Shown: one piece after another, positions 18,509-61,930 of the stretch
Numbering within the stretch: position 1 is the stretch's first letter
Layout of the letters: every line of letters starts with the position of its first letter
Source of the DNA: Octopus vulgaris
Lineage: Eukaryota
DNA length: 62,000 nucleotides
Assembly: GCA_951406725.2 (NCBI GenBank)
Contig: OX597822.1
Span: 43,606,001 to 43,668,000 of the forward strand
Direction: 5' to 3'
Made by a program: the position numbers and the translations under genes
The notes under the pieces: model-generated
Databases searched by the model: none
What the model was told of the DNA's origin: nothing
What the model saw: only the letters and a program-made list of their open reading frames with translations

Positions 18509-22014
<3,506 letters not shown>

Positions 22015-24638
22015 CAGTAGTTTTATTTTTATAGCGTGCTTTCACTTCACTACCGAGCGCAGCTCTGTGTGCCTTGGGTATGTGCTGTGATTTGTTGTGA
22101 TGCTCTGATGGTTATTGTATGGAAAGTGTTCTGCGTAGGATGTGTGCAGTGCCTAGTAGTGCAATTTTCTGTATGTTATATGTGTTTGTAAGTCCTGGTG
22201 TTTTTGTTATGTATTTGTCTGAATATTTTTTTATCATGCCTAATGCACCTACTATGATAGGAATTGTTTCTGTTTTCAGATTCCACATTCTAGTTACCTC
22301 TATTTCCAGGTCTTTGTATTTTGAGAGTTTCTCCATTTCTTTTAGAGACACGTTGTCATCAGCCGGTTTTGATACATCAATTAGAAAGCATTTTTTTTCT
22401 TCATGGTCTCTGACAACTATATCTGGTCTGTTGGCCTTAATTTCACTATCTGTGTGTATCGGCATATCCCAGAGTATGGTTGTTTTCTCGTTTTCTGTGA
22501 CCATTTCTGGTGTGTGCCTATACCATCTTTTTTCTGTTGTTATTCCATAATGTTGGCATAGCTTCCAATGTATGTAGGTTCCAACTCTGTCATGTCTGTG
22601 AATATATTTCTTCTTAGCCAGGACTGGGCAGCTAGAGATAATATGATTTATTGTTTCTTGTCCATCTCCACATATTCTGCAGTTACTTGTAATATTTCTT
22701 TTCATTACATGTTTTTGGTAATTTCTGGTGGGGAGGCTTTGGTCTTGTGCTGCAATTAAAAATCCCTCTGTTTCTGCTTTGAGTCCTGAGCTTCTCAACC
22801 ATTGCTGGGATTTTTCTTTGTCTATTTCTTTTGCGTTTAGTTTAGTCCAGTATTTACCATGAAGGGGCTTTTCTTGCCATCGTTTTATCATGGTTCGTTG
22901 CTGTTCTATTTTTAGTTTGGATTTCATTTGTATTATAGCTTTTGTTGTTTCTTCATCTTCTTTTTCTTCTTCATGTTTATTAGGTGGTATGATTTCTTGT
23001 TTGTATTTGTCAGCTTCCTTAAATACTGAGAACAGTTTTTTGTTTTGCTCGTGTTTTGCCGCTATCTGGATCAGTTTTCCTTCCTTCTGAAGTAGATATT
23101 TTTGCAGTCCTATGGTGGTTATTTTATAGTAGTTTTCCAGCTGTATAAGACCTCTACCACCTTCTATACGTTTTATATATAGTCTTTCTATGTCAGATTT
23201 TGGTGATGCATCCTAGATCCTGTCATTATTTTTCTTGTTTTCCTATCTATTTTGGTCAGTTCATTTCGTGTCCAGTTAAGGATATTGTAGCTGTAACTTA
23301 TAACTGGGACAGCTAAAGTGTTGATACCTATTATCTTGTTTTTAGCATTGAGCTCTGTGTTTAGTATTGATCTAACTCGTCTATAATATTCTTTTTTTAT
23401 TTTCTCTTTCATTTGTGTGTGTTGTGTCTTATCTAGTTCATGGATTCCTAAGTATTTGTAAGTTTGGCTTTGGTCTAATTCTTTTATTTCATTGGTTTTA
23501 TCTAGTGTGATGTTGCTACTCTTAACTATTTTTCCTCTTTTCATGGTTACTTTGGCGCATTTTTCTAATCCAAATTTCATATCTATTTCTTTGGTAAATC
23601 CATGAACTGTCTTTAATAGTGTTTCCAGCTGTTTGTCATTTGTAGCGTATAGTTTTAGGTCATCCATATATAAAAGGTGGCTGATCGTTTTGCCGTAACA
23701 TTTATATCTGCATCCAGTTCTATTTAGCATATCAGATAGAGGTGACAGTGCCAAGCAGAGAAGGAGTGGAGAGAGCGTGTCTCCCTGGAATATTCCTCTT
23801 CTAATGGGGATGTCTTTGGTTTTCATGAGTCCCTCTTTTGTTTGGAGGTGTAGGACTGTTTGCCATTTATTCATAGAGTGCTCTATGAATTTTATGATTG
23901 TTGGTGCTACTTTGTTAATGGCTAGTGTTTCGAGGATCCATGTGTGGGGGATGCTATCAAACGCCTTTTTGTAGTCAATCCAGGCCATACTGAGGCCTTT
24001 CTACTTTCTGTGGCTGTCTTCAGTTATTGCTTTATTAATCATTAGTTGATCTTTACAGCCATATGAGCCTTTGCGGCATCCTTTCTGCTCTTCTGGGAAC
24101 AGTTTGTTTTCGTCCAGGTGCTTGTTCAGCCTTTGTGATATCACTGCAGTAAATGCCATGAACATAGTAGGGAGGCAGGTTATTGGTCTGTAGTTTTCTG
24201 GTTTTTCTGTTTCATTTGATTTGGGAATTAAAATGGTTTTCCCCTTCGTGAGCCATTCAGGCATTGTCTCTGGCTCTGCTAGTACGTTGTTAAAGTTTTC
24301 AGCCAGCTTTTTGTGCATTCCTGTTAGATATTTCAACCAGAAGTTGGGGATCTTGTCATGCCCAGGTGCCTTCCAGCTGCTTAGTCTTTGCAGTGCCTGG
24401 GTGACCTCTTCAGTTGTTATGGGGGTCCAAAGTTGTTCAGATGCCGAGTTTGTTATTTTGATACTCCTTTTTTTGGTGGTTCGTTCGCTGACCATATTTC
24501 TCTCCAGAATTCTTCCAATTCTTCTGCCGTTGGTGCTGCAGTGACTTCTATTTTATTTTTTCCCAATTCTTGGTAGAACTTTTTGGGGTTGGAGTTGAAC
24601 TTTTTGTTTTCTTCAAAGAAGCGTTGGCGTTTCTTGTA
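22015..24638 (-). mobile_element. R4/Dong-like RLE non-LTR retrotransposon copy 2 (more 5'-truncated)
   Basis: Same 3' end and nearly identical to copy 1. GIFQGDTLSP and YMDD present; C-terminal ORF 22112-22927 intact. Nonsense change near 24001 (TAG vs AAG) and a frameshift near 23190. Confidence 0.95.
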
Positions 24639-48145: not shown

Positions 48146-48800
48146 GTAAAAAGTGAAAAAACTACAGAAGGCTTAAATGATAAAAAATATATATTTGCCG
48201 TCAATATGTCTGAAGAACATTAAAAAAATGTTTTCTCTTATTATGACATAGTTTAGAAGAAAGACCGGTTTCGCGTTTAGCTTTTCAAATTTCTTGCGAC
48301 GTTATGTTTATGTTGAACTGAGTTATCGTTATGTTTATGTTCAAAAGAGTTCTAAATAAGGGGAGGTAATGAGTGATTTCTTCTGGTGTAAGGGAGATAA
48401 TCGCTTAAAAATGTTTTCCTTTCCCTTGGTGTGAATTTCTCTGTATCAGTACGTTGGGATGGTTAAGTCTGGGCTTGTACTTTTCAATGAAGAATGTTTC
48501 CTTGTTTAGTCTAATTTGTGTTGATGATCCGATAGCACATTGGTAAAATGGAAAGATTAAAAATTGTGGTAGTAGTTGCTTTGCGCATTTCTCAATATAT
48601 ATCTGTACCGTTTGATAGAGGCAAAAGAATCTGTAATCTCTGCAACTCTGAACTTTTTCACACTTTGTTCGCCCGAGGGCGGCTAGTTAACGCGATTTTG
48701 CAAAACTCTTTCAGATGTCCCCATTGGAGGCGCCACACATTTCTTGCATACAATTGAAGCCTAAGATAATTAACACCTTGATGTCCTAAGAAAGGAAAAA
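48140..48800 (-). pseudogene. Penelope-like GIY-YIG 3' fragment
   Basis: Minus translation YIEKCAKQLLPQFLIFPFYQCAIGSSTQIRLNKETFFIEKYKPRLN. Confidence 0.8.
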
Positions 48801-49665
48801 AATTTTGGAAAAAATTTGGAAAAAAATTTTGAATTAAATTTGTAAAGGGAAATTACTCCCCTTTTAACGTATGATCTGCTACTTATTTAGAAACAATATC
48901 AGGGATTATACTCCCCTTGTTTAATAAGTCATCTGTGTATAAACTGACCACAGACGAACACATAGACAGAGGCTCCTATCGGCCGCTTGACCTACAATAT
49001 CTGCAATATATTTTCCCACTAGCTGCTTCCTAACATACTGCCACACATACACAGGCGCACACACACATACATGTAAGTAGTTTCTCACACCCAAATAAGA
49101 TAGCTTTCATTCTTAAAACAATTCGAACATTAACATTAGTTATACAGAATATATTCACACTCTTTGGTTTTCTTGAATTCTTCCCCTACCAAATTTAACC
49201 GCAGTTTGACCTCGATTTATTCCAACGGACTTTTTCGTCGGCCTTCACACACCCTGACGTCAACACACATTGAGAGACAGTTTTGTGCCTGACCATGGGC
49301 TCCTAGGGAGCGTTTTGTTCGAATAGCTTGCTGCGCATTTGTTTTGGAGATTTATATTCCTGGTTTTTCCTGAAGAGAAAGCTGCAAAATGGTCTCCTTA
49401 TTCAATCCGAATTTGGAAATTTGCAGCCTTTGAAACATGTGTAGAAAATAATAAAAAGGAAATTTGTAGAATCTTCGTTCAGCTCCATTTCTTCCCTTCA
49501 CTAAATATATAAAACTTCAATTATCCGCGCTAAGGCACGGTTGCGACACCCCATGGTCGTAACCTCAACCGTGTTTTTTCTGTTGTGATTTTTGCTACCC
49601 AGGTATCGGTTAAATTTTGAATAAATTTTGAATAATCCGTAACAAGATAATTCATTTATCCATTT

Positions 49666-53614: not shown

Positions 53615-55042
53615 TTAGGTCATCCTATAAATAATGCAGTTTTTATACTTATTTTATTCTTTCAAAATTGAGTTAAACGAAGTTTATTTTTAATCTAAAA
53701 TGCACTCTCCTTCATTTTCTACAAGGCTCTTCTATCTATCCAGAAGACTTACAAGGCCCACAAATTCCAAAATTCACTTGTCCGTAACGAAAAATACTCC
53801 AATAGTAGTGTTCTGCCATCGTCTACAGAATTCATATTTTCTCCGTCCAAATGATTTTGAAGACTACGGAATAAATGATAATCAGATGGGGCAGTGCCTG
53901 ATGAATTTGGTAGGTGGGACATCGTTTCCCGTTCAAACTGCTCCAGCCTTTCGAATGTCATCCTCACTGTATGTGGCCGAGCATTATCCTGATGGAAGAG
54001 CACCTTTCGTCTTGAAATCAAAGATGGTTGTTTTCCTTCTAGCGTTGACTTAAGCCGCTCAAGCTGCTTGCAGTAGATCTCCATTGTTATCGTTTTGTTT
54101 GGGTTTAAATGTTCAAAGCGGACTAAACCTTTCATATCCCACCAAACAGATAAAAACACCTTACGTGGGTGAAGACGTTCTTTAGCCTGGGGTACCGGTG
54201 TTTCTCCTTTTCCTACACACTGTCGTCGGCGCTTGATATTTTTATAGAGGACCCATTTCTCGTAAGCAGTCATTATTAGGTGACCAAGTAACAATGGGAT
54301 TTTGTTCCTTGGGGATTTGCAGGACGTCATCGTCGAGCTCTATAGATCTTCCAGAACAAGGCTCATCTTCTAGGCTGCAGTTTCCGGCTCGTAATTTCAG
54401 GAACCACCGTTGACACTGGCTCACGCTTATTGTTCGATCCCCATATACTGCATTAATATTCCTCGCACTTTGCATTGTGTTACGTTGTTTGTTATTTCTC
54501 GAGCCACGCCAGGCTCATAAGGGCCAGTCTCCCGGTTTCTTGGCGTATAGGTTCCCCACCTGGACGGGACGCAGGTCCGTCACAGGTGAGCTGCAAGATG
54601 CAGGAGAAAAGAGTGAGAGAAAGTTGTGGTGAAAGAGTCAGCAGAAGTTCGCCATTACCTTCTGCAGGAGCCGCGTGGAGCTTAGGTGTTTCGCTCATAA
54701 ACACAAACATCGCCGGTCTGAGATTCGAATCGGTGATCCCTCGACCGCGAGTCTGCGGCTCTAACGACTAGGCCATGTCCCTCCACACTGTTGCGTTGTT
54801 GCCTTTATTGAACTCATAGAGCAAAATATGCCGAATATGCTCTTCTGTCACTTCCATTATAGCTTTGAAAAAAAAACTGTTAAAACCGAACTGTGCACTT
54901 TTCAAAACTTGCACTAAGAATATATACATGGTAAAATTACTACCTGCATTTACAGCAAGTTGATGCAGGTAGTTCATCTTGTCCCCCTCCGAATTTTAGT
55001 CAATGCAGTTGACAAAACCGCATTATTTATGGGATGACCCAA
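53615..55042 (-). mobile_element. mariner copy 3 with internal deletion and SINE insertion
   Basis: TIRs ttaggtcatcctataaataatgcag and cgcattatttatgggatgacccaa with TA on both sides. ORF 53749-54330 has LFHQDNARPHT..APSDYHLFRSLQ; N-terminus MEVTEEHIRHILLYEFNKGNNAT. Confidence 0.93.
54478..54785 (-). mobile_element. SINE family C inserted in mariner copy 3
   Basis: Minus head ggcctagtcgttagagccgcagactcgcggtcgag; RTE-like tail gagcctggcgtggctcgag. Confidence 0.88.
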
Positions 55043-55455: not shown

Positions 55456-55588
55456 TTAATACATGCATTTACTGCTGATTCATTCGCCAATTGAGGGACG
55501 ATAAGAGGAAAAGATGTATATTCCATCTTGGTGGGGCTTGAACTCAGGACGTAAAGATAAGGCCAAAAAGAGCGAGCTGGCTTGCCCT

Positions 55589-56020
55589 GCTAGAAATAGT
55601 AGCTAAATGGAATGTAAACATGGCAGTTTGACCCTCTAGATATAGTAGCTAAATGGCACGTTTATGGTGTAGCTTGAACTGCTGGAAATAGCAGGTAACC
55701 GAAACGTCTATATGGTTACATGTCTTGCTAAAATAGCGGCTAAATAGGACGTCTACATGGTAGCTTGAGCCGCTAGAAATAGCAGTTAAACTGAACGTGT
55801 AGATGGCACTTTGACTTGCTAGAAATAGCAGCTAAATGGAAGGTCTACGTGGAAGCTTGATCTGATAGAAATGGTGGTTAAAAGAAACGTCTTCATGCTA
55901 GCTTGACCTGCGCGAAATAGCAGCTAAACGAAACGTTTACGTAGTAGTTTTTCCTGTTAGAAATAACAGCTAACTGGAATGTCTACGTGGTAGACTGACT
56001 TGCTAGAAATAGCAGCTAAA
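55589..56020. repeat. 46-bp minisatellite, ~9.4 diverged units
   Basis: Unit ~gctagaaatagcagctaaatggaacgtctacatggtagcttgacct. First and last starts are 413 bp apart (9 periods). Confidence 0.9.
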
Positions 56021-57664
56021 TCCACCTCAAGTATTATCCAATTTCCTTGAATAAGGAAATGATGCATTGGATAATGTATTCTTGGAGACGCCTGAAAATC
56101 ATTTAGTCACCGGTCTGGTCAATTAGGATTGACCTAGGGTTAAACAACAACAGCAACAAAAGCAGCAGAAACAGCAACAATAGCTGCAGCAGCAACAATA
56201 GCAATACACTAGTAATTTAATCGGGCGCTCTACCGATTCTAGACCACTGTAAATGAATCTATTAATCTGCTTCGCATTGAAAACAGAATCTCTTCAGATT
56301 TTTAGATTTATTGTCGATTTACAACAATGGGAGGCAACAGCAAAATTAAAGACAACAACAAGAAGTGGCTGGGAGGTTGAGTGGGCGTGGATGGAGAAGG
56401 GTGAAGTGTTGGTGGAAGAGAGGGTTTTGGAATAAAATAAATGATGAAAATTCTTTAGCAGAAACAATGAATAATGATGAAAATGATGAACAATTCTTCA
56501 ACTGAGAGATAAAAAATAACGAACAAATAAAGAGACAAATATGAACATATAAATAAAACTAAAAGCAAACTGAATGAAAACTAAAGTGAGATAATTAAAA
56601 AATGACAATAATAACAACAACAACAGCAGCAGCAACAAAATACAATATTTTTAGGAAAAAATTCTATAAAACAAGCAAAAAAATAACAATTATGGACAAG
56701 GAATTATTTCTTCGGAACAAATGTCTATTGTTGAGATGTAAAATGAGAATGGAACTGAGGTGAAGTGAGATATGGTATAATCCAAAGGCTAGTAAAATAC
56801 TTGATTTTTCTCCTCGTCTTCTTTATCCTCCTCTTTATGAAACAAAGCCTACCAACGACCAGAGTAGCCATTTTTGTCCTTCTCTGAGAAGTTTAGATGC
56901 TTCTACCTACCAACCAACCAACCAGCCAGCCAGCCAGCCAACCATTCTCCCTCCCCTGTCAACCAACCAAATTCGCTACCATCTTCTCTCTGTCTCCTTA
57001 TGTAACAAAAGCCATCATTATTTTCTTTTTAACCCTTCGCAATGATTATTATTATTATTATTTTTCGTTGAATGATTAATGCATTTATTAATCATTTAAT
57101 AAAAGCACTGCCCCAGTATGGCCGTCGTACAATGACTGGAACAAGTAAAAGTAAAAGTTAAAGTTATATTTAATAATCCTGGCCACGAATCGATTTATCC
57201 GGAAGGGAACCAAAAAAAATTAACTTCAATTATTTTCCCCCTCTTCCTTCGATATTACGATACTCGTGTCATGAAAGCTGGTTGAATTAGGATAGAGGAT
57301 CGAATGGAGCCAAATGCAGTTCCATTTTATTATTCATTCATTTTAAATACGATACTGAATGAAACCTCATCATGCCTTTACCGTTTTATTTATCCTCTAG
57401 CAGGACTAACTGTCCAAGCTCGCCGCCATGTGTGATGCAAACGTAACTTCAGTTGTTTTGAGACTGTTTCTCGTCTTCAGCACTTGAGTCGGGATTGAAC
57501 TCAGACCGCAACGTACACATATTGTAAAGCATACTACCCGAGGCTCTAACGGCTCTGTCGACTGCCTTAAAATTGACAACGTACAACACCTGGTCAAACA
57601 CTTTCAACTCTGTCTGACGGGTATCCATTTGACAGACTGAATGCGCTAATACGGGTGTCATATT

Positions 57665-59782: not shown

Positions 59783-59828
<46 letters not shown>

Positions 59829-59829
<1 letters not shown>

Positions 59830-60274
59830 CAAAAATAAATCTCTGAACGAGGTATAAACAGTAGCTACACGACATCGTGAAGTATATTTGCCACTTAAAT
59901 GTGGCTAACCCTTAAGGGTGGATGCTACTGTAGCTTGTAGCCCCAGGAGGACACCTCTTCCAGCTGGCTATTGACACACTTTCTGTACCTTATCAGTATT
60001 TTCAAAGGGAAGCCATCGTTCTCGTCCTCAACCTATGATACACACGGACTCGAGTTTCTGGGTATTGACCCGTCATCAGCGTATGAAAATCACTGGCTGT
60101 CGATGAAAAGTAAGCCTCCCTTTGCAAATATATATCCTTTTTCCAGTGACAAAAAGTCACTGATGTCGAAAAAGTGTAAACAAGCAAAAATATATCTCTG
60201 AGCGAGGTATAAACGGTAGCTGCACTACATCGTGAAGTATATGTGTCACTTAAATGTGGCTAACCCCTAAGGGT
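59829..60274 (-). mobile_element. hammerhead-containing repeat, ~1.25 units of a 355-bp period (retrozyme or Penelope pLTR-like)
   Basis: 59829-59919 is repeated at 60184-60274 (offset 355), with a hammerhead between. Confidence 0.6.
60041..60085 (-). ncRNA. type I hammerhead ribozyme motif
   Basis: Minus: CAUACG CUGAUGA C GGGU caau ACCC A GAAA CUCGAG UC CGUGUG. 6-bp stem I, palindromic stem III ACUCGAGU, GUC triplet; C.A mismatch at the base of stem II. Confidence 0.72.
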
Positions 60275-60296
60275 TACCCACATGATATATATATAA

Positions 60297-60340
<44 letters not shown>

Positions 60341-61140: not shown

Positions 61141-61180
61141 ATTATATGTAAAAAATATATAAGCAATAAACCTATAAACG

Positions 61181-61424
61181 TCACGATGTGTTGCAGCTAC
61201 TGTTTATAACTCGCTCTAAGATTTATTATTGCTTCTTTACACTTATTCGATATCAGTGTCTTTACGATACTGTAAAAAGTATATGTATTTGTGAAGGGAA
61301 CCTACTTTTCATCGACAACTGTGATTGTCACACACCGATGACGGGTCAATATCCAGAAACTCGAGTCCGTGTGTATCATAAGTTGGAGACGGAAAGTATG
61401 GCTTCCCTTTGCAAATACTGATAG
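61181..61424 (+). mobile_element. inverted second copy of the hammerhead-containing repeat
   Basis: Reverse complement of 59990-60235. Its hammerhead at 61329-61373 has core CCGAUGA (U4 to C). Confidence 0.75.
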
Positions 61425-61454
61425 GGCGCACAAAGTGTGTCTATAGCCAGAAAG

Positions 61455-61580
61455 TGTGTCTAAAGAGACCGGTAGAATAAGTACTAGCCTTACAAAGAAT
61501 AAGTCCTGGGGTCGATTTGCTCGACTAAAGCTGGTGCTCCAGCATGGCCACAGTCAAATGACTGAAGCAATTAAAAGAGT
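61455..61580 (+). mobile_element. SINE family A 3' end
   Basis: aagagaccggtagaataagtactagc..gtcgatttgctcgactaaagctggtgctccagcatggcc. Confidence 0.85.
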
Positions 61581-61636
61581 ATATATATATATATATATAT
61601 GCATATATACACATATGTATATATATATACATATAC

Positions 61637-61708
<72 letters not shown>

Positions 61709-61930
61709 ATATATGTATATATATATGTGTATATGTATATATATATATATACATATATGTATATGTATATATATATACATATATGTATATGTATATATAT
61801 ACATATATGTATATATATATATATATATATAGTTAATCCAAACAAGAAAACACAGAAAAAAAGAGAAAAAACACAGCAACGCAGGACGTGGAACAATTAA
61901 AGTATTATTGACGCTCAGGAAAGAAGGGAA

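What the first reader, a model, noticed from the sequence alone, without database searches (positions are those of the whole stretch)
59829..60274. Retrozyme-like unit: intact-looking hammerhead within a long outer stem and a 355-bp periodic repeat
Seen: a well-formed type I hammerhead (60041-60085, minus; 6-bp stem I, GUC site). It is enclosed by an outer helix pairing 15 of 16 positions (60114-60129 with 59998-60013). The surrounding sequence repeats at 355 bp and has no ORF. Established: non-LTR retrozymes in animals are tandem, few-hundred-nt hammerhead repeats processed to circular RNAs and thought to be mobilised by Penelope-like RTs. Inference: a member of an undescribed cephalopod retrozyme-like family. 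Penelope relics nearby are plausible partners. This locus has only one hammerhead, so it could not release a monomer itself.
Basis: partly seen in the sequence, partly recalled or inferred. Interest (0 to 1): 0.75.

Follow-up and report, generated by a model that had tools for sequence, protein, structure and literature searches.

The report
Hammerhead repeat mobilised by Penelope elements
This is one inert copy of an apparently undescribed octopus repeat family, with at least hundreds and probably thousands of copies, that carries a hammerhead-ribozyme motif and is spread by Penelope-like retrotransposons: a new member of a known kind of element, not a new kind.

Summary
The type-I hammerhead motif at 60041-60085 (minus) has every core nucleotide. 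The outer helix pairs 15 of 16 positions. A 92-nt stretch repeats at 355 bp. There is no tRNA head and no conserved ORF.

The locus is 1.28 units of a ~355-bp non-coding dispersed repeat. The 45-nt hammerhead alone has 638 near-exact genome hits against 0 for the control.

Sampled copies show Penelope-like (PLE) insertion anatomy:
- partial tandems with variable 5' ends;
- two fixed 3' ends about 45 nt apart;
- inverted 5'-truncated partners;
- (TA)n targets in 17 of 30 loci;
- 9-14-bp target duplications;
- one 8.9-unit array.

In two of 30 loci a PLE reverse-transcriptase fragment is fused to the unit's 5' end. I read these as template-switch chimeras that implicate PLE enzymes.

Three caveats apply. 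The hammerhead has a C/A mismatch at the base of helix II. Its 2-bp palindromic helix III is predicted to fold only as a dimer. The youngest subfamily carries a core U4C change, so catalysis may be dispensable for spread. RNA reads showed neither cleavage ends nor circles.

The reverse-transcriptase relics inside the window are LINE-like, not Penelope. Verdict: a real, retrozyme-like, PLE-dependent family. Circular RNA is unproven.

The parts
59829..60284 (-). Whole retrocopy: 1.28 units of the ~355-bp repeat, with no ORF and no tRNA head
60183..60274 (-). Upstream partial unit (pLTR-like direct repeat), equivalent to the last 92 nt of the unit
   Evidence: 91% identical to 59828-59919, spacing 355
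59828..59919 (-). The 3'-terminal 92 nt of the full unit. The element's canonical 3' end abuts (TA)n.
   Evidence: 21 of 30 copies end here
60041..60085 (-). Type-I, Penelope-type hammerhead motif: stem I 6 bp, helix II 4 bp plus a C/A mismatch, helix III the palindrome ACUCGAGU, GUC site. The predicted cut is between 60047 and 60046.
60114..60129 (-). 5' arm of the outer helix that encloses the hammerhead in a rod-like fold
59998..60013 (-). 3' arm of the outer helix (15 of 16 pairs here; 17 of 17 in the family majority)
59785..59828 (.). (TA)22 microsatellite at the element's 3' end; the likely insertion target
60285..60336 (.). (AT)26 microsatellite at the element's 5' end; the other half of the target
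61174..61450 (+). Second, diverged partial copy (83% identical) of the U4C subfamily. Its hammerhead-like motif at 61329-61373 reads CCGAUGA.

Best explanation
The locus is a dead-end retrocopy of a non-autonomous, non-coding retroelement family. The genome is octopus-like: 2.8 Gb with about 30 large contigs.

The family unit is about 355 bp. It folds into a stable, branched structure (about 63% of bases paired) whose central arm is a long quasi-rod. That arm encloses a Penelope-type type-I hammerhead.

The family is copied by the reverse transcriptase and GIY-YIG endonuclease of Penelope-like elements (PLEs). Priming occurs at nicked (TA)n or other sites from a fixed point of the unit RNA. 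Reverse transcription then runs for more than one unit length and stops or switches template. This leaves partial tandems ('pseudo-LTRs'), inverted 5'-truncated partners and occasional chimeras with PLE mRNA.

Shown here: family membership, copy anatomy, target duplications, chimeras and motif conservation.

Inferred: that PLE enzymes do the copying, and which RNA form is the template.

The hammerhead is predicted to work only as a dimer. It therefore needs two units in one transcript, or a second transcript in trans. With one motif, this locus cannot excise a monomer. Whether multimeric loci make unit-length linear or circular RNA (the retrozyme cycle) is plausible but unshown. Recent spread of a U4C subfamily suggests cleavage is not required for mobility.
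For: Family size and spread:
- The first look gave 4499 candidates. The 40 that were scored are 85-92% identical and lie on many contigs.
- The 45-nt hammerhead has 638 hits at <=3 mismatches (22 exact), against 0 for the reversed control.

Anatomy of 30 sampled copies:
- Lengths are 1.08-2.18 units.
- 5' ends vary.
- 3' ends fall in two clusters about 45 nt apart (21 and 7 of 30).
- Head-to-head inverted 5'-truncated partners are frequent.
- One array has 8.9 units of 352 bp at 98% identity and ends at a canonical 3' end.
- (TA)n lies at insertion ends in 17 of 30 loci.
- Target duplications of 9-14 bp occur in 4 of 19 non-microsatellite loci, against 0 of 400 mismatched-flank controls.
- These are the hallmarks listed for PLE insertions in PMC8557442.

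Chimeras:
- L020 1088-1496 encodes PLE RT residues 363-508 (61% identity). It is fused in the same orientation to the unit's 5' end, and the composite is flanked by (TA)n on both sides.
- L002 1164-1491 is a second, distant PLE RT piece fused the same way.
- In both, homology to thousands of ordinary PLE copies stops exactly at the junction, and no other genomic copy spans it.

PLEs in the genome:
- Apparently intact PLEs are abundant. Open frames of 781 aa carry RVT_1 plus a C-terminal GIY-YIG, and this family also ends on (TA)n.
- Other PLE-associated hammerheads in the genome share the AC-NNNN-GU palindromic helix III.

Folding:
- A dimer cofold gives two hammerheads joined by an 8-bp intermolecular helix III (-31.7 kcal/mol against 2 x -12.5 for monomers). 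The monomer minimum-energy fold is not a hammerhead.
- The unit folded as a circle gives -110.4 kcal/mol, z = -4.6, at GC 42.5%.
Against: - No sequence similarity was found between the unit and the pLTR of the one PLE family examined in full, or 30 GIY-YIG loci. The autonomous partner is therefore unidentified.
- There are only two chimeras.
- Rfam hammerhead models do not score the motif, though the control shows they miss this class.
- The C/A mismatch at 10.1/11.1 holds in 31 of 36 copies and may cripple catalysis.
- RNA reads from a related or same-label organism matched only sub-modules. They showed no pile-up of ends at 60047/60046 and no unit-length joints.
- The copy sample is biased to long matches, because the query was 1.28 units.
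Confidence: 0.78

Rival explanations
1. Full retrozyme cycle. Multimeric loci are transcribed, the hammerheads cut out 355-nt monomers, a tRNA ligase circularises them, and PLE RT copies the circle by rolling-circle reverse transcription. That would explain why every copy is longer than one unit.
For: - All 30 sampled copies exceed one unit, and an 8.9-unit array has a canonical 3' end.
- The unit folds stably (z = -4.6 as a circle) and has low GC.
- The dimer-type hammerhead has all core bases.
- There is precedent in the axolotl Rtz_353, which has a 2-bp helix III and a mismatch at the base of helix II and cleaves as a dimer (PMC7229834).
Against: - The 3' ends of copies are not at the cleavage site.
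- Coding PLEs make the same partial tandems from linear RNA.
- The youngest subfamily (pairwise identity 0.913 against 0.868) carries U4C yet shows the same architecture, target duplications and the array.
- There was no read evidence for circles or cleavage ends.
Confidence: 0.35
2. Ordinary pseudo-LTR. The unit is simply the terminal non-coding region of an autonomous PLE. The copies would be solo pLTRs or heavily 5'-truncated or internally deleted PLEs.
For: - Two loci have PLE RT sequence directly upstream of the unit.
- In Xenopus, retrozymes are homologous to pLTRs (bioRxiv 10.64898/2026.07.22.740005).
Against: - The tandem period is a closed 352-355-bp unit with no coding insert.
- 28 of 30 loci have no PLE coding sequence within 1.5 kb.
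- The two fused RT pieces come from different PLE families, break mid-ORF, and have unique junctions.
- There is no similarity to the pLTR examined.
Confidence: 0.1
3. Satellite or segmental repeat with a chance or fossil hammerhead-like motif, spread by DNA-level duplication rather than retrotransposition.
For: A tandem array exists, and 'goes back ~346' joints appear in DNA contigs.
Against: - Copies are dispersed on many of the large contigs.
- They have fixed 3' ends, variable 5' truncation and target duplications.
- The motif occurs 0 times in 200 shuffled windows.
Confidence: 0.03

Closest known systems
Animal non-LTR retrozymes (Cervera & de la Pena 2020, PMC7229834), especially axolotl Rtz_353 with HHR_Amex2
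   Same: - Non-coding unit of about 350 bp with GC below 45% and a type-I hammerhead.
- 2-bp helix III capped by a tetraloop, and a mismatch at the base of helix II.
- Predicted dependence on dimer formation.
- Tandem copies exist.
- Target duplications longer than 4 bp.
   Different: - Most sampled copies here are dispersed 1.1-1.7-mers with a single hammerhead, not long arrays.
- The mismatch is C/A, not U/U.
- Unit-length linear or circular RNA has not been shown.
- The host is a cephalopod, which that paper does not cover.
Minimal hammerheads in pseudo-LTRs of Penelope-like elements (Cervera & de la Pena 2014, as cited in PMC8557442)
   Same: - Short palindromic helix III of the form AC-NNNN-GU.
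- Association with partial tandem and inverted insertions and with microsatellite targets.
- The same helix III style occurs near GIY-YIG loci of this genome.
   Different: The unit carries no ORF. It shows no detectable homology to the pLTR of the PLE family examined.
Xenopus retrozymes shown to be pLTR relatives (Li, Clavereau & Pollet, bioRxiv 10.64898/2026.07.22.740005)
   Same: The same conclusion that retrozymes depend on and derive from PLEs, and the same co-occurrence with PLEs.
   Different: The evidence there is sequence homology to pLTRs. Here homology was not found, and the link rests on insertion anatomy and on PLE-RT/unit chimeras.
Schistosoma Sm-alpha and newt satellite 2 hammerhead repeats (from my own knowledge, not checked here)
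   Same: SINE-like or satellite repeats of a few hundred bp with type-I hammerheads. The newt motif needs dimers.
   Different: Different hosts and sequences. PLE-type architecture has not been documented for them, to my knowledge.
L1/U6 and similar template-switch chimeric retrocopies in mammals (from my own knowledge)
   Same: A 5' piece of a second RNA is fused to a 3' retrocopy within one insertion. This is used as a signature of which reverse transcriptase acted.
   Different: A different enzyme family (LINE-1 versus PLE). Only two cases have been seen here.

Membership tests
Hammerhead ribozyme, type I | Invariant core C3-U4-G5-A6-N7-G8-A9, G12-A13-A14, A15.1-U16.1, and a non-G at position 17 | tested here: met
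   All are present at 60079-60047 and in the family majority. The U4C subfamily and the second window copy fail this test.
Hammerhead ribozyme, type I | Three helices around the core, with helix I open | tested here: met
   Stem I has 6 bp, helix II 4 bp, helix III 2 bp. There were 0 such motifs in 200 shuffled windows.
Hammerhead ribozyme, type I | Watson-Crick pair at 10.1/11.1, the base of helix II | tested here: not met
   C/A in this copy and in 31 of 36 copies; U-A in 5 of 36. Axolotl HHR_Amex2 is active with a U/U mismatch there.
Hammerhead ribozyme, type I | Match to a curated covariance model (Rfam hammerhead families) | tested here: inconclusive
   No hit at E<=10. The models also miss four other PLE-type hammerheads of this genome.
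Hammerhead ribozyme, type I | Site-specific self-cleavage | not testable with these tools
   Thermodynamics only. The hammerhead fold is the minimum-energy structure for the dimer, not for the monomer. Reads show no end pile-up at 60047/60046.
Non-LTR retrozyme | Short (150-450 bp), low-GC, non-coding unit carrying a type-I hammerhead, without LTR, PBS or PPT | tested here: met
   The unit is 352-355 bp at GC 42.5%, with no ORF and no tRNA head.
Non-LTR retrozyme | Tandem organisation with two or more hammerheads per locus | tested here: not met
   This locus has 1.28 units and one hammerhead. At family level an 8.9-unit array and a 2.2-unit copy exist, but 28 of 30 sampled copies have fewer than two units.
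Non-LTR retrozyme | Unit-length linear and circular RNAs in tissues | tested here: inconclusive
   Two raw RNA runs (about 6% read) gave only partial, sub-module matches at under 99% identity and no joints. No RNA run of the source organism was on record.
PLE-dependent non-autonomous element | Partial tandem (pseudo-LTR), inverted 5'-truncated partner, terminal 'tail', and microsatellite bias | tested here: met
   The definitions come from PMC8557442.
PLE-dependent non-autonomous element | Sequence homology of the unit to the pLTR of a coding PLE | tested here: not met
   No similarity to 30 GIY-YIG loci or to the L066 pLTR.
Classical SINE | tRNA-, 5S- or 7SL-derived head with a pol III promoter | tested here: not met
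   ARAGORN found none. Rfam at E<=10 found no tRNA, 5S or 7SL.

The most novel reading that the evidence does not exclude
Hammerhead catalysis is dispensable for retrozyme spread. On this reading the octopus family behaves as a Penelope-dependent 'SINE'. Its partial tandems, arrays and inverted partners come from PLE reverse-transcriptase template jumping on linear RNA, not from rolling-circle copying of a circular RNA. The youngest, still structured subfamily carries a core-inactivating U4C change. The PLE-RT/unit chimeras would then be the first direct footprint of PLE enzymes acting on a retrozyme.
Probability: 0.4. Interest if true: 0.6.

Novelty: new member of a known kind. Interest (0 to 1): 0.45.

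Why it matters
Hammerhead-bearing repeats are known from corals, mussels, amphibians and other animals. In the literature I could search, cephalopods appear only as an uncommented count of Rfam hits in the giant squid genome. Current octopus repeat annotations list hundreds of 'unclassified SINE' families.

This family gives these repeats a mechanism-based classification as Penelope-dependent. It adds a mollusc lineage with very active PLEs to the retrozyme story.

It also offers two useful handles:
- Chimeric insertions that tie the repeat physically to PLE mRNA.
- A natural experiment, subfamily A with CUGAUGA against the younger subfamily B with CCGAUGA, on whether ribozyme activity matters for mobility.

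Tried and rejected
- Rfam scans at gathering and at E<=10 on the window, on family copies and on PLE loci gave no hammerhead hits. The control shows the models miss Penelope-type motifs, so I did not use this as evidence against the motif.
- blastn (word 7) and Smith-Waterman of the unit against 36 PLE loci and one pLTR gave nothing above shuffles.
- The flank-versus-flank comparison of loci was too noisy. The genome is saturated with other repeats.
- Covariation in the outer helix: the changes seen (GCG to GCA or GTG) are CpG decay that keeps G-U or A-U pairs. Dispersed copies decay neutrally, so the test has no power.
- RNA evidence: no holder was on record as RNA for the source organism. 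Two raw RNA runs of 'organism C' matched only 59877-59972 and the hammerhead core 60037-60082 and then diverged. This shows that related families are transcribed somewhere, nothing more.
I did not try to get those letters another way.
- A Helitron or DNA-transposon reading, prompted by the (TA)n targets and terminal hairpin, was rejected because of 5' truncation, 9-14-bp duplications and the tandem/inverted anatomy.
- 'Penelope relics nearby' was checked. The ORFs at 18.9-24.5 kb are RVT_1 plus zf-RVT (LINE-like), and 53749-54330 is a mariner transposase.

Full report
**Observation**

Read on the minus strand, 60085-60041 has the layout of a type-I hammerhead:
- stem I of 6 bp (CAUACG / CGUGUG, one G-U pair);
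- the CUGAUGA box;
- helix II (GGGU/ACCC with loop CAAU, closed by a C/A mismatch at 10.1/11.1);
- GAA;
- helix III, which is the 8-nt palindrome ACUCGAGU (2 bp plus a tetraloop);
- C17 at 60047.

A scanner I wrote for this architecture finds two motifs in the real window and none in 200 dinucleotide-preserving shuffles.

The outer helix 60129-60114 with 60013-59998 pairs 15 of 16 positions. It belongs to the minimum-energy fold of the 456-nt copy (-151 kcal/mol, z = -6.2).

The 355-bp periodicity is a single 92-nt direct repeat at 91% identity, 59828-59919 against 60183-60274. The locus therefore holds 1.28 units. It sits between (TA)22 and (AT)26.

There is no tRNA-like head and no meaningful ORF.

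No Rfam model reports a hammerhead, even at E<=10. Rfam also fails on four other clear short-helix-III hammerheads from this genome. I treat the Rfam negative as uninformative.

**What the locus belongs to**

The window is G000:C9:43606001-43668000 in a 2.8-Gb genome with about 30 large contigs. This matches the published Octopus vulgaris assembly size (PMC13282606). Species identity is my inference.

The 456-nt copy has 4499 first-look candidates. The 40 that were scored are 85-92% identical and lie on many contigs.

The family-majority 45-nt hammerhead has 638 hits at <=3 mismatches (22 exact), against 0 for the reversed control. In the majority sequence stem I is fully Watson-Crick.

**Anatomy of copies**

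In 30 fetched loci:
- The same-strand block is 1.08-2.18 units long (median about 1.3).
- 5' ends are scattered.
- 3' ends fall in two tight clusters about 45 nt apart: 21 of 30 at the end that abuts (TA)n in the window, and 7 of 30 about 45 nt upstream.
- Many copies have an adjacent, inverted, 5'-truncated partner arranged head to head.
- (TA)n of at least four units lies within 25 bp of an insertion end in 17 of 30 loci.
- Among 19 loci without microsatellite flanks, four have 9-14-bp target duplications, against none in 400 mismatched-flank controls.

On contig C2 an array of 8.9 units of 352 bp at 98% identity starts 5'-truncated and ends at the shorter canonical 3' end.

Partial tandems ('pseudo-LTRs'), inverted 5'-truncated partners, a 30-40-bp terminal 'tail' and microsatellite bias, including (TA)n, are exactly the features listed for Penelope-like element insertions in PMC8557442.

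**Link to Penelope-like elements**

The genome holds very many GIY-YIG hits (6136 candidates), many with an uninterrupted 781-aa frame.

One such element (L066) has:
- RVT_1 at residues 259-442 and GIY-YIG at 685-772;
- 456-bp pseudo-LTRs that are 99.3% identical;
- a 3' end on (TA)n.

The unit shows no detectable similarity to that pseudo-LTR or to 30 GIY-YIG loci. The partner is not identified.

A tblastn of the PLE ORF against the 35 unit loci hit only two places, and both lie directly at a unit's 5' boundary in the same orientation:
- L020 1088-1496 encodes RT residues 363-508 at 61% identity. It then switches to the unit at 1497-1499. The composite is flanked by (TA)n on both sides.
- L002 1164-1491 is a piece of a distant PLE RT, fused likewise.

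Searching the genome with each junction region shows thousands of ordinary PLE copies whose homology stops exactly at the junction. No other copy spans it.

The PLE pieces are truncated mid-ORF at their 3' side, so they are not normal PLE insertions. PLE sequence does not resume after the unit, so the unit did not insert into a PLE.

I read them as template-switch chimeras. Reverse transcription began on unit RNA and jumped to a PLE mRNA. By a rough count, chance adjacency of two such fragments within 10 bp of a unit 5' end in the same orientation is of order 1e-5. This rests on only two cases.

**The ribozyme**

Other hammerhead-like motifs in the fetched PLE loci and in random flanks share the AC-NNNN-GU palindromic helix III. 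One has the identical ACUCGAGU. The unit's motif therefore belongs to the Penelope-type, dimer-acting class.

Thermodynamic prediction agrees:
- The isolated 45-mer prefers a non-hammerhead fold (-12.5 against -7.6 kcal/mol for the hammerhead).
- Two copies cofold into two complete hammerheads joined by an 8-bp helix III (-31.7 kcal/mol).

The C/A mismatch at the base of helix II is the family state (31 of 36 copies; 5 of 36 have U-A). A precedent is axolotl HHR_Amex2. It has a 2-bp helix III and a U/U mismatch at the same place, sits in a 353-bp repeat, and cleaves weakly as a monomer and well as a dimer (PMC7229834).

The 355-nt monomer folded as a circle gives -110.4 kcal/mol (z = -4.6). 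The antisense gives -97.6. GC is 42.5%.

**A complication**

Nine of 36 aligned copies read CCGAUGA (U4C). They include the 8.9-unit array and the window's second copy at 61174-61450.

These nine copies share five linked diagnostic columns. They are more alike (0.913) than the CUGAUGA copies are to each other (0.868). Two of them have target duplications.

U4 belongs to the invariant core (established knowledge; I did not test the size of the effect). The most recent burst therefore seems to have used a master with an impaired ribozyme, yet it kept the same architecture.

The fixed 3' ends also lie about 170-220 nt from the cleavage site. Cleaved linear monomers primed at their 3' end were therefore not the template.

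Together these favour PLE-style copying of linear or multimeric RNA. The circular-RNA stage becomes optional rather than required. They do not exclude it for A-type arrays.

**RNA**

No run on record as RNA holds the stretch.

Two raw RNA-seq runs of a coded 'organism C' were laid at 85% likeness, with about 6% of each run read:
- About 590 reads per run matched, none at >=99% identity.
- 92% ran on into unlike sequence.
- Matches concentrated on 59877-59972 and on 60037-60082, which is almost exactly the hammerhead.
- Both read directions were roughly equal.
- No start or end pile-up appeared at 60047/60046.
- No joints were seen.

DNA-like contigs of 'organism A' show several 'goes back ~346' joints, which indicates tandem copies.

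This shows only that diverged relatives sharing the hammerhead core are transcribed. It neither supports nor refutes cleavage or circles.

**Known or new**

I found no paper describing hammerhead repeats or retrozymes in cephalopods:
- The giant squid genome paper lists 235 Rfam hammerhead_1 hits without comment.
- The 2026 O. vulgaris repeat annotation mentions neither hammerheads nor retrozymes. It lists 893 'unclassified SINE' families among its recently active insertions.
- The concept of non-LTR retrozymes as PLE-dependent derivatives is already established (PMC7229834; bioRxiv 10.64898/2026.07.22.740005).

This is a new member of a known kind. It has two features of some specialist interest: the chimeras and the U4C subfamily.

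**Limits**

- The copy sample is small and biased to long matches.
- I built no full-length family consensus and no repaired PLE. Only a 78-nt majority string and the 146-column alignment consensus that the tool printed were used.

Noticed in passing
window 49365-49448 (+): A second hammerhead-like motif of a different family: UUUUC-CUGAAGA, a long helix II, then GAAAC-AUGU-GUA-GAAAA. It is homologous to motifs in PLE loci L043, L057 and L011. A faint GIY-YIG-like remnant lies at 48462-48608 (-), tblastn E = 7e-4.
   Followed up: partly
window 61174-61450 (+): A second, 83%-identical partial copy of the same unit from the U4C subfamily. It lies head to head with the finding about 0.9 kb away. 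Its hammerhead-like motif is at 61329-61373. It is truncated at unit position q321 by another repeat (61454-61728), which also abuts unit 3' ends in L003, L005 and L012.
   Followed up: partly
window 18875-24495 (-): Two successive broken reverse-transcriptase relics (RVT_1 plus zf-RVT). They are LINE-like, not Penelope-like.
   Followed up: partly
window 53749-54330 (-): ORF with Transposase_1 (a mariner-type partial DDE domain), E = 2e-21.
   Followed up: no
window 55580-56021: Tandem repeat of period 46/92 bp, 4.8-9.6 copies, 67-77% matches. Unrelated to the finding.
   Followed up: no
L066:1930-7172 (G000:C16:20834929-20840171): An apparently intact Penelope-like element with a 781-aa frame and 456-bp pseudo-LTRs at 99.3% identity. 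Upstream of the 3' pseudo-LTR are about 92-bp repeats, each carrying TGACGTC(A/C), a CRE-like site. My scanner found no canonical hammerhead anywhere in it, although it has a C-terminal endonuclease. Many copies with the same 781-aa frame exist, one of them 350 kb from the window.
   Followed up: partly
window 60255-60284 (-) and 59900-59922 (-): The unit contains the palindrome ACCCTTAAGGGT. In the 5' copy it is extended to a 30-nt hairpin made of TAACCC/TTAGGG, which are telomere-repeat-like hexamers. Seven of 30 copies have their 5' end within a few nt of it, so it may be a preferred stop or template-switch point.
   Followed up: no
L044 451-536 (+) and 127-212 (-); L069 820-862 (-); L039 626-697 (-): Several further families of short-helix-III hammerhead motifs near GIY-YIG loci (helix III ACGAUCGU, ACAAUUGU, ACUCGAGU). 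None is detected by Rfam models at E<=10. Rfam-based counts of hammerheads in cephalopod genomes are therefore likely large underestimates.
   Followed up: partly
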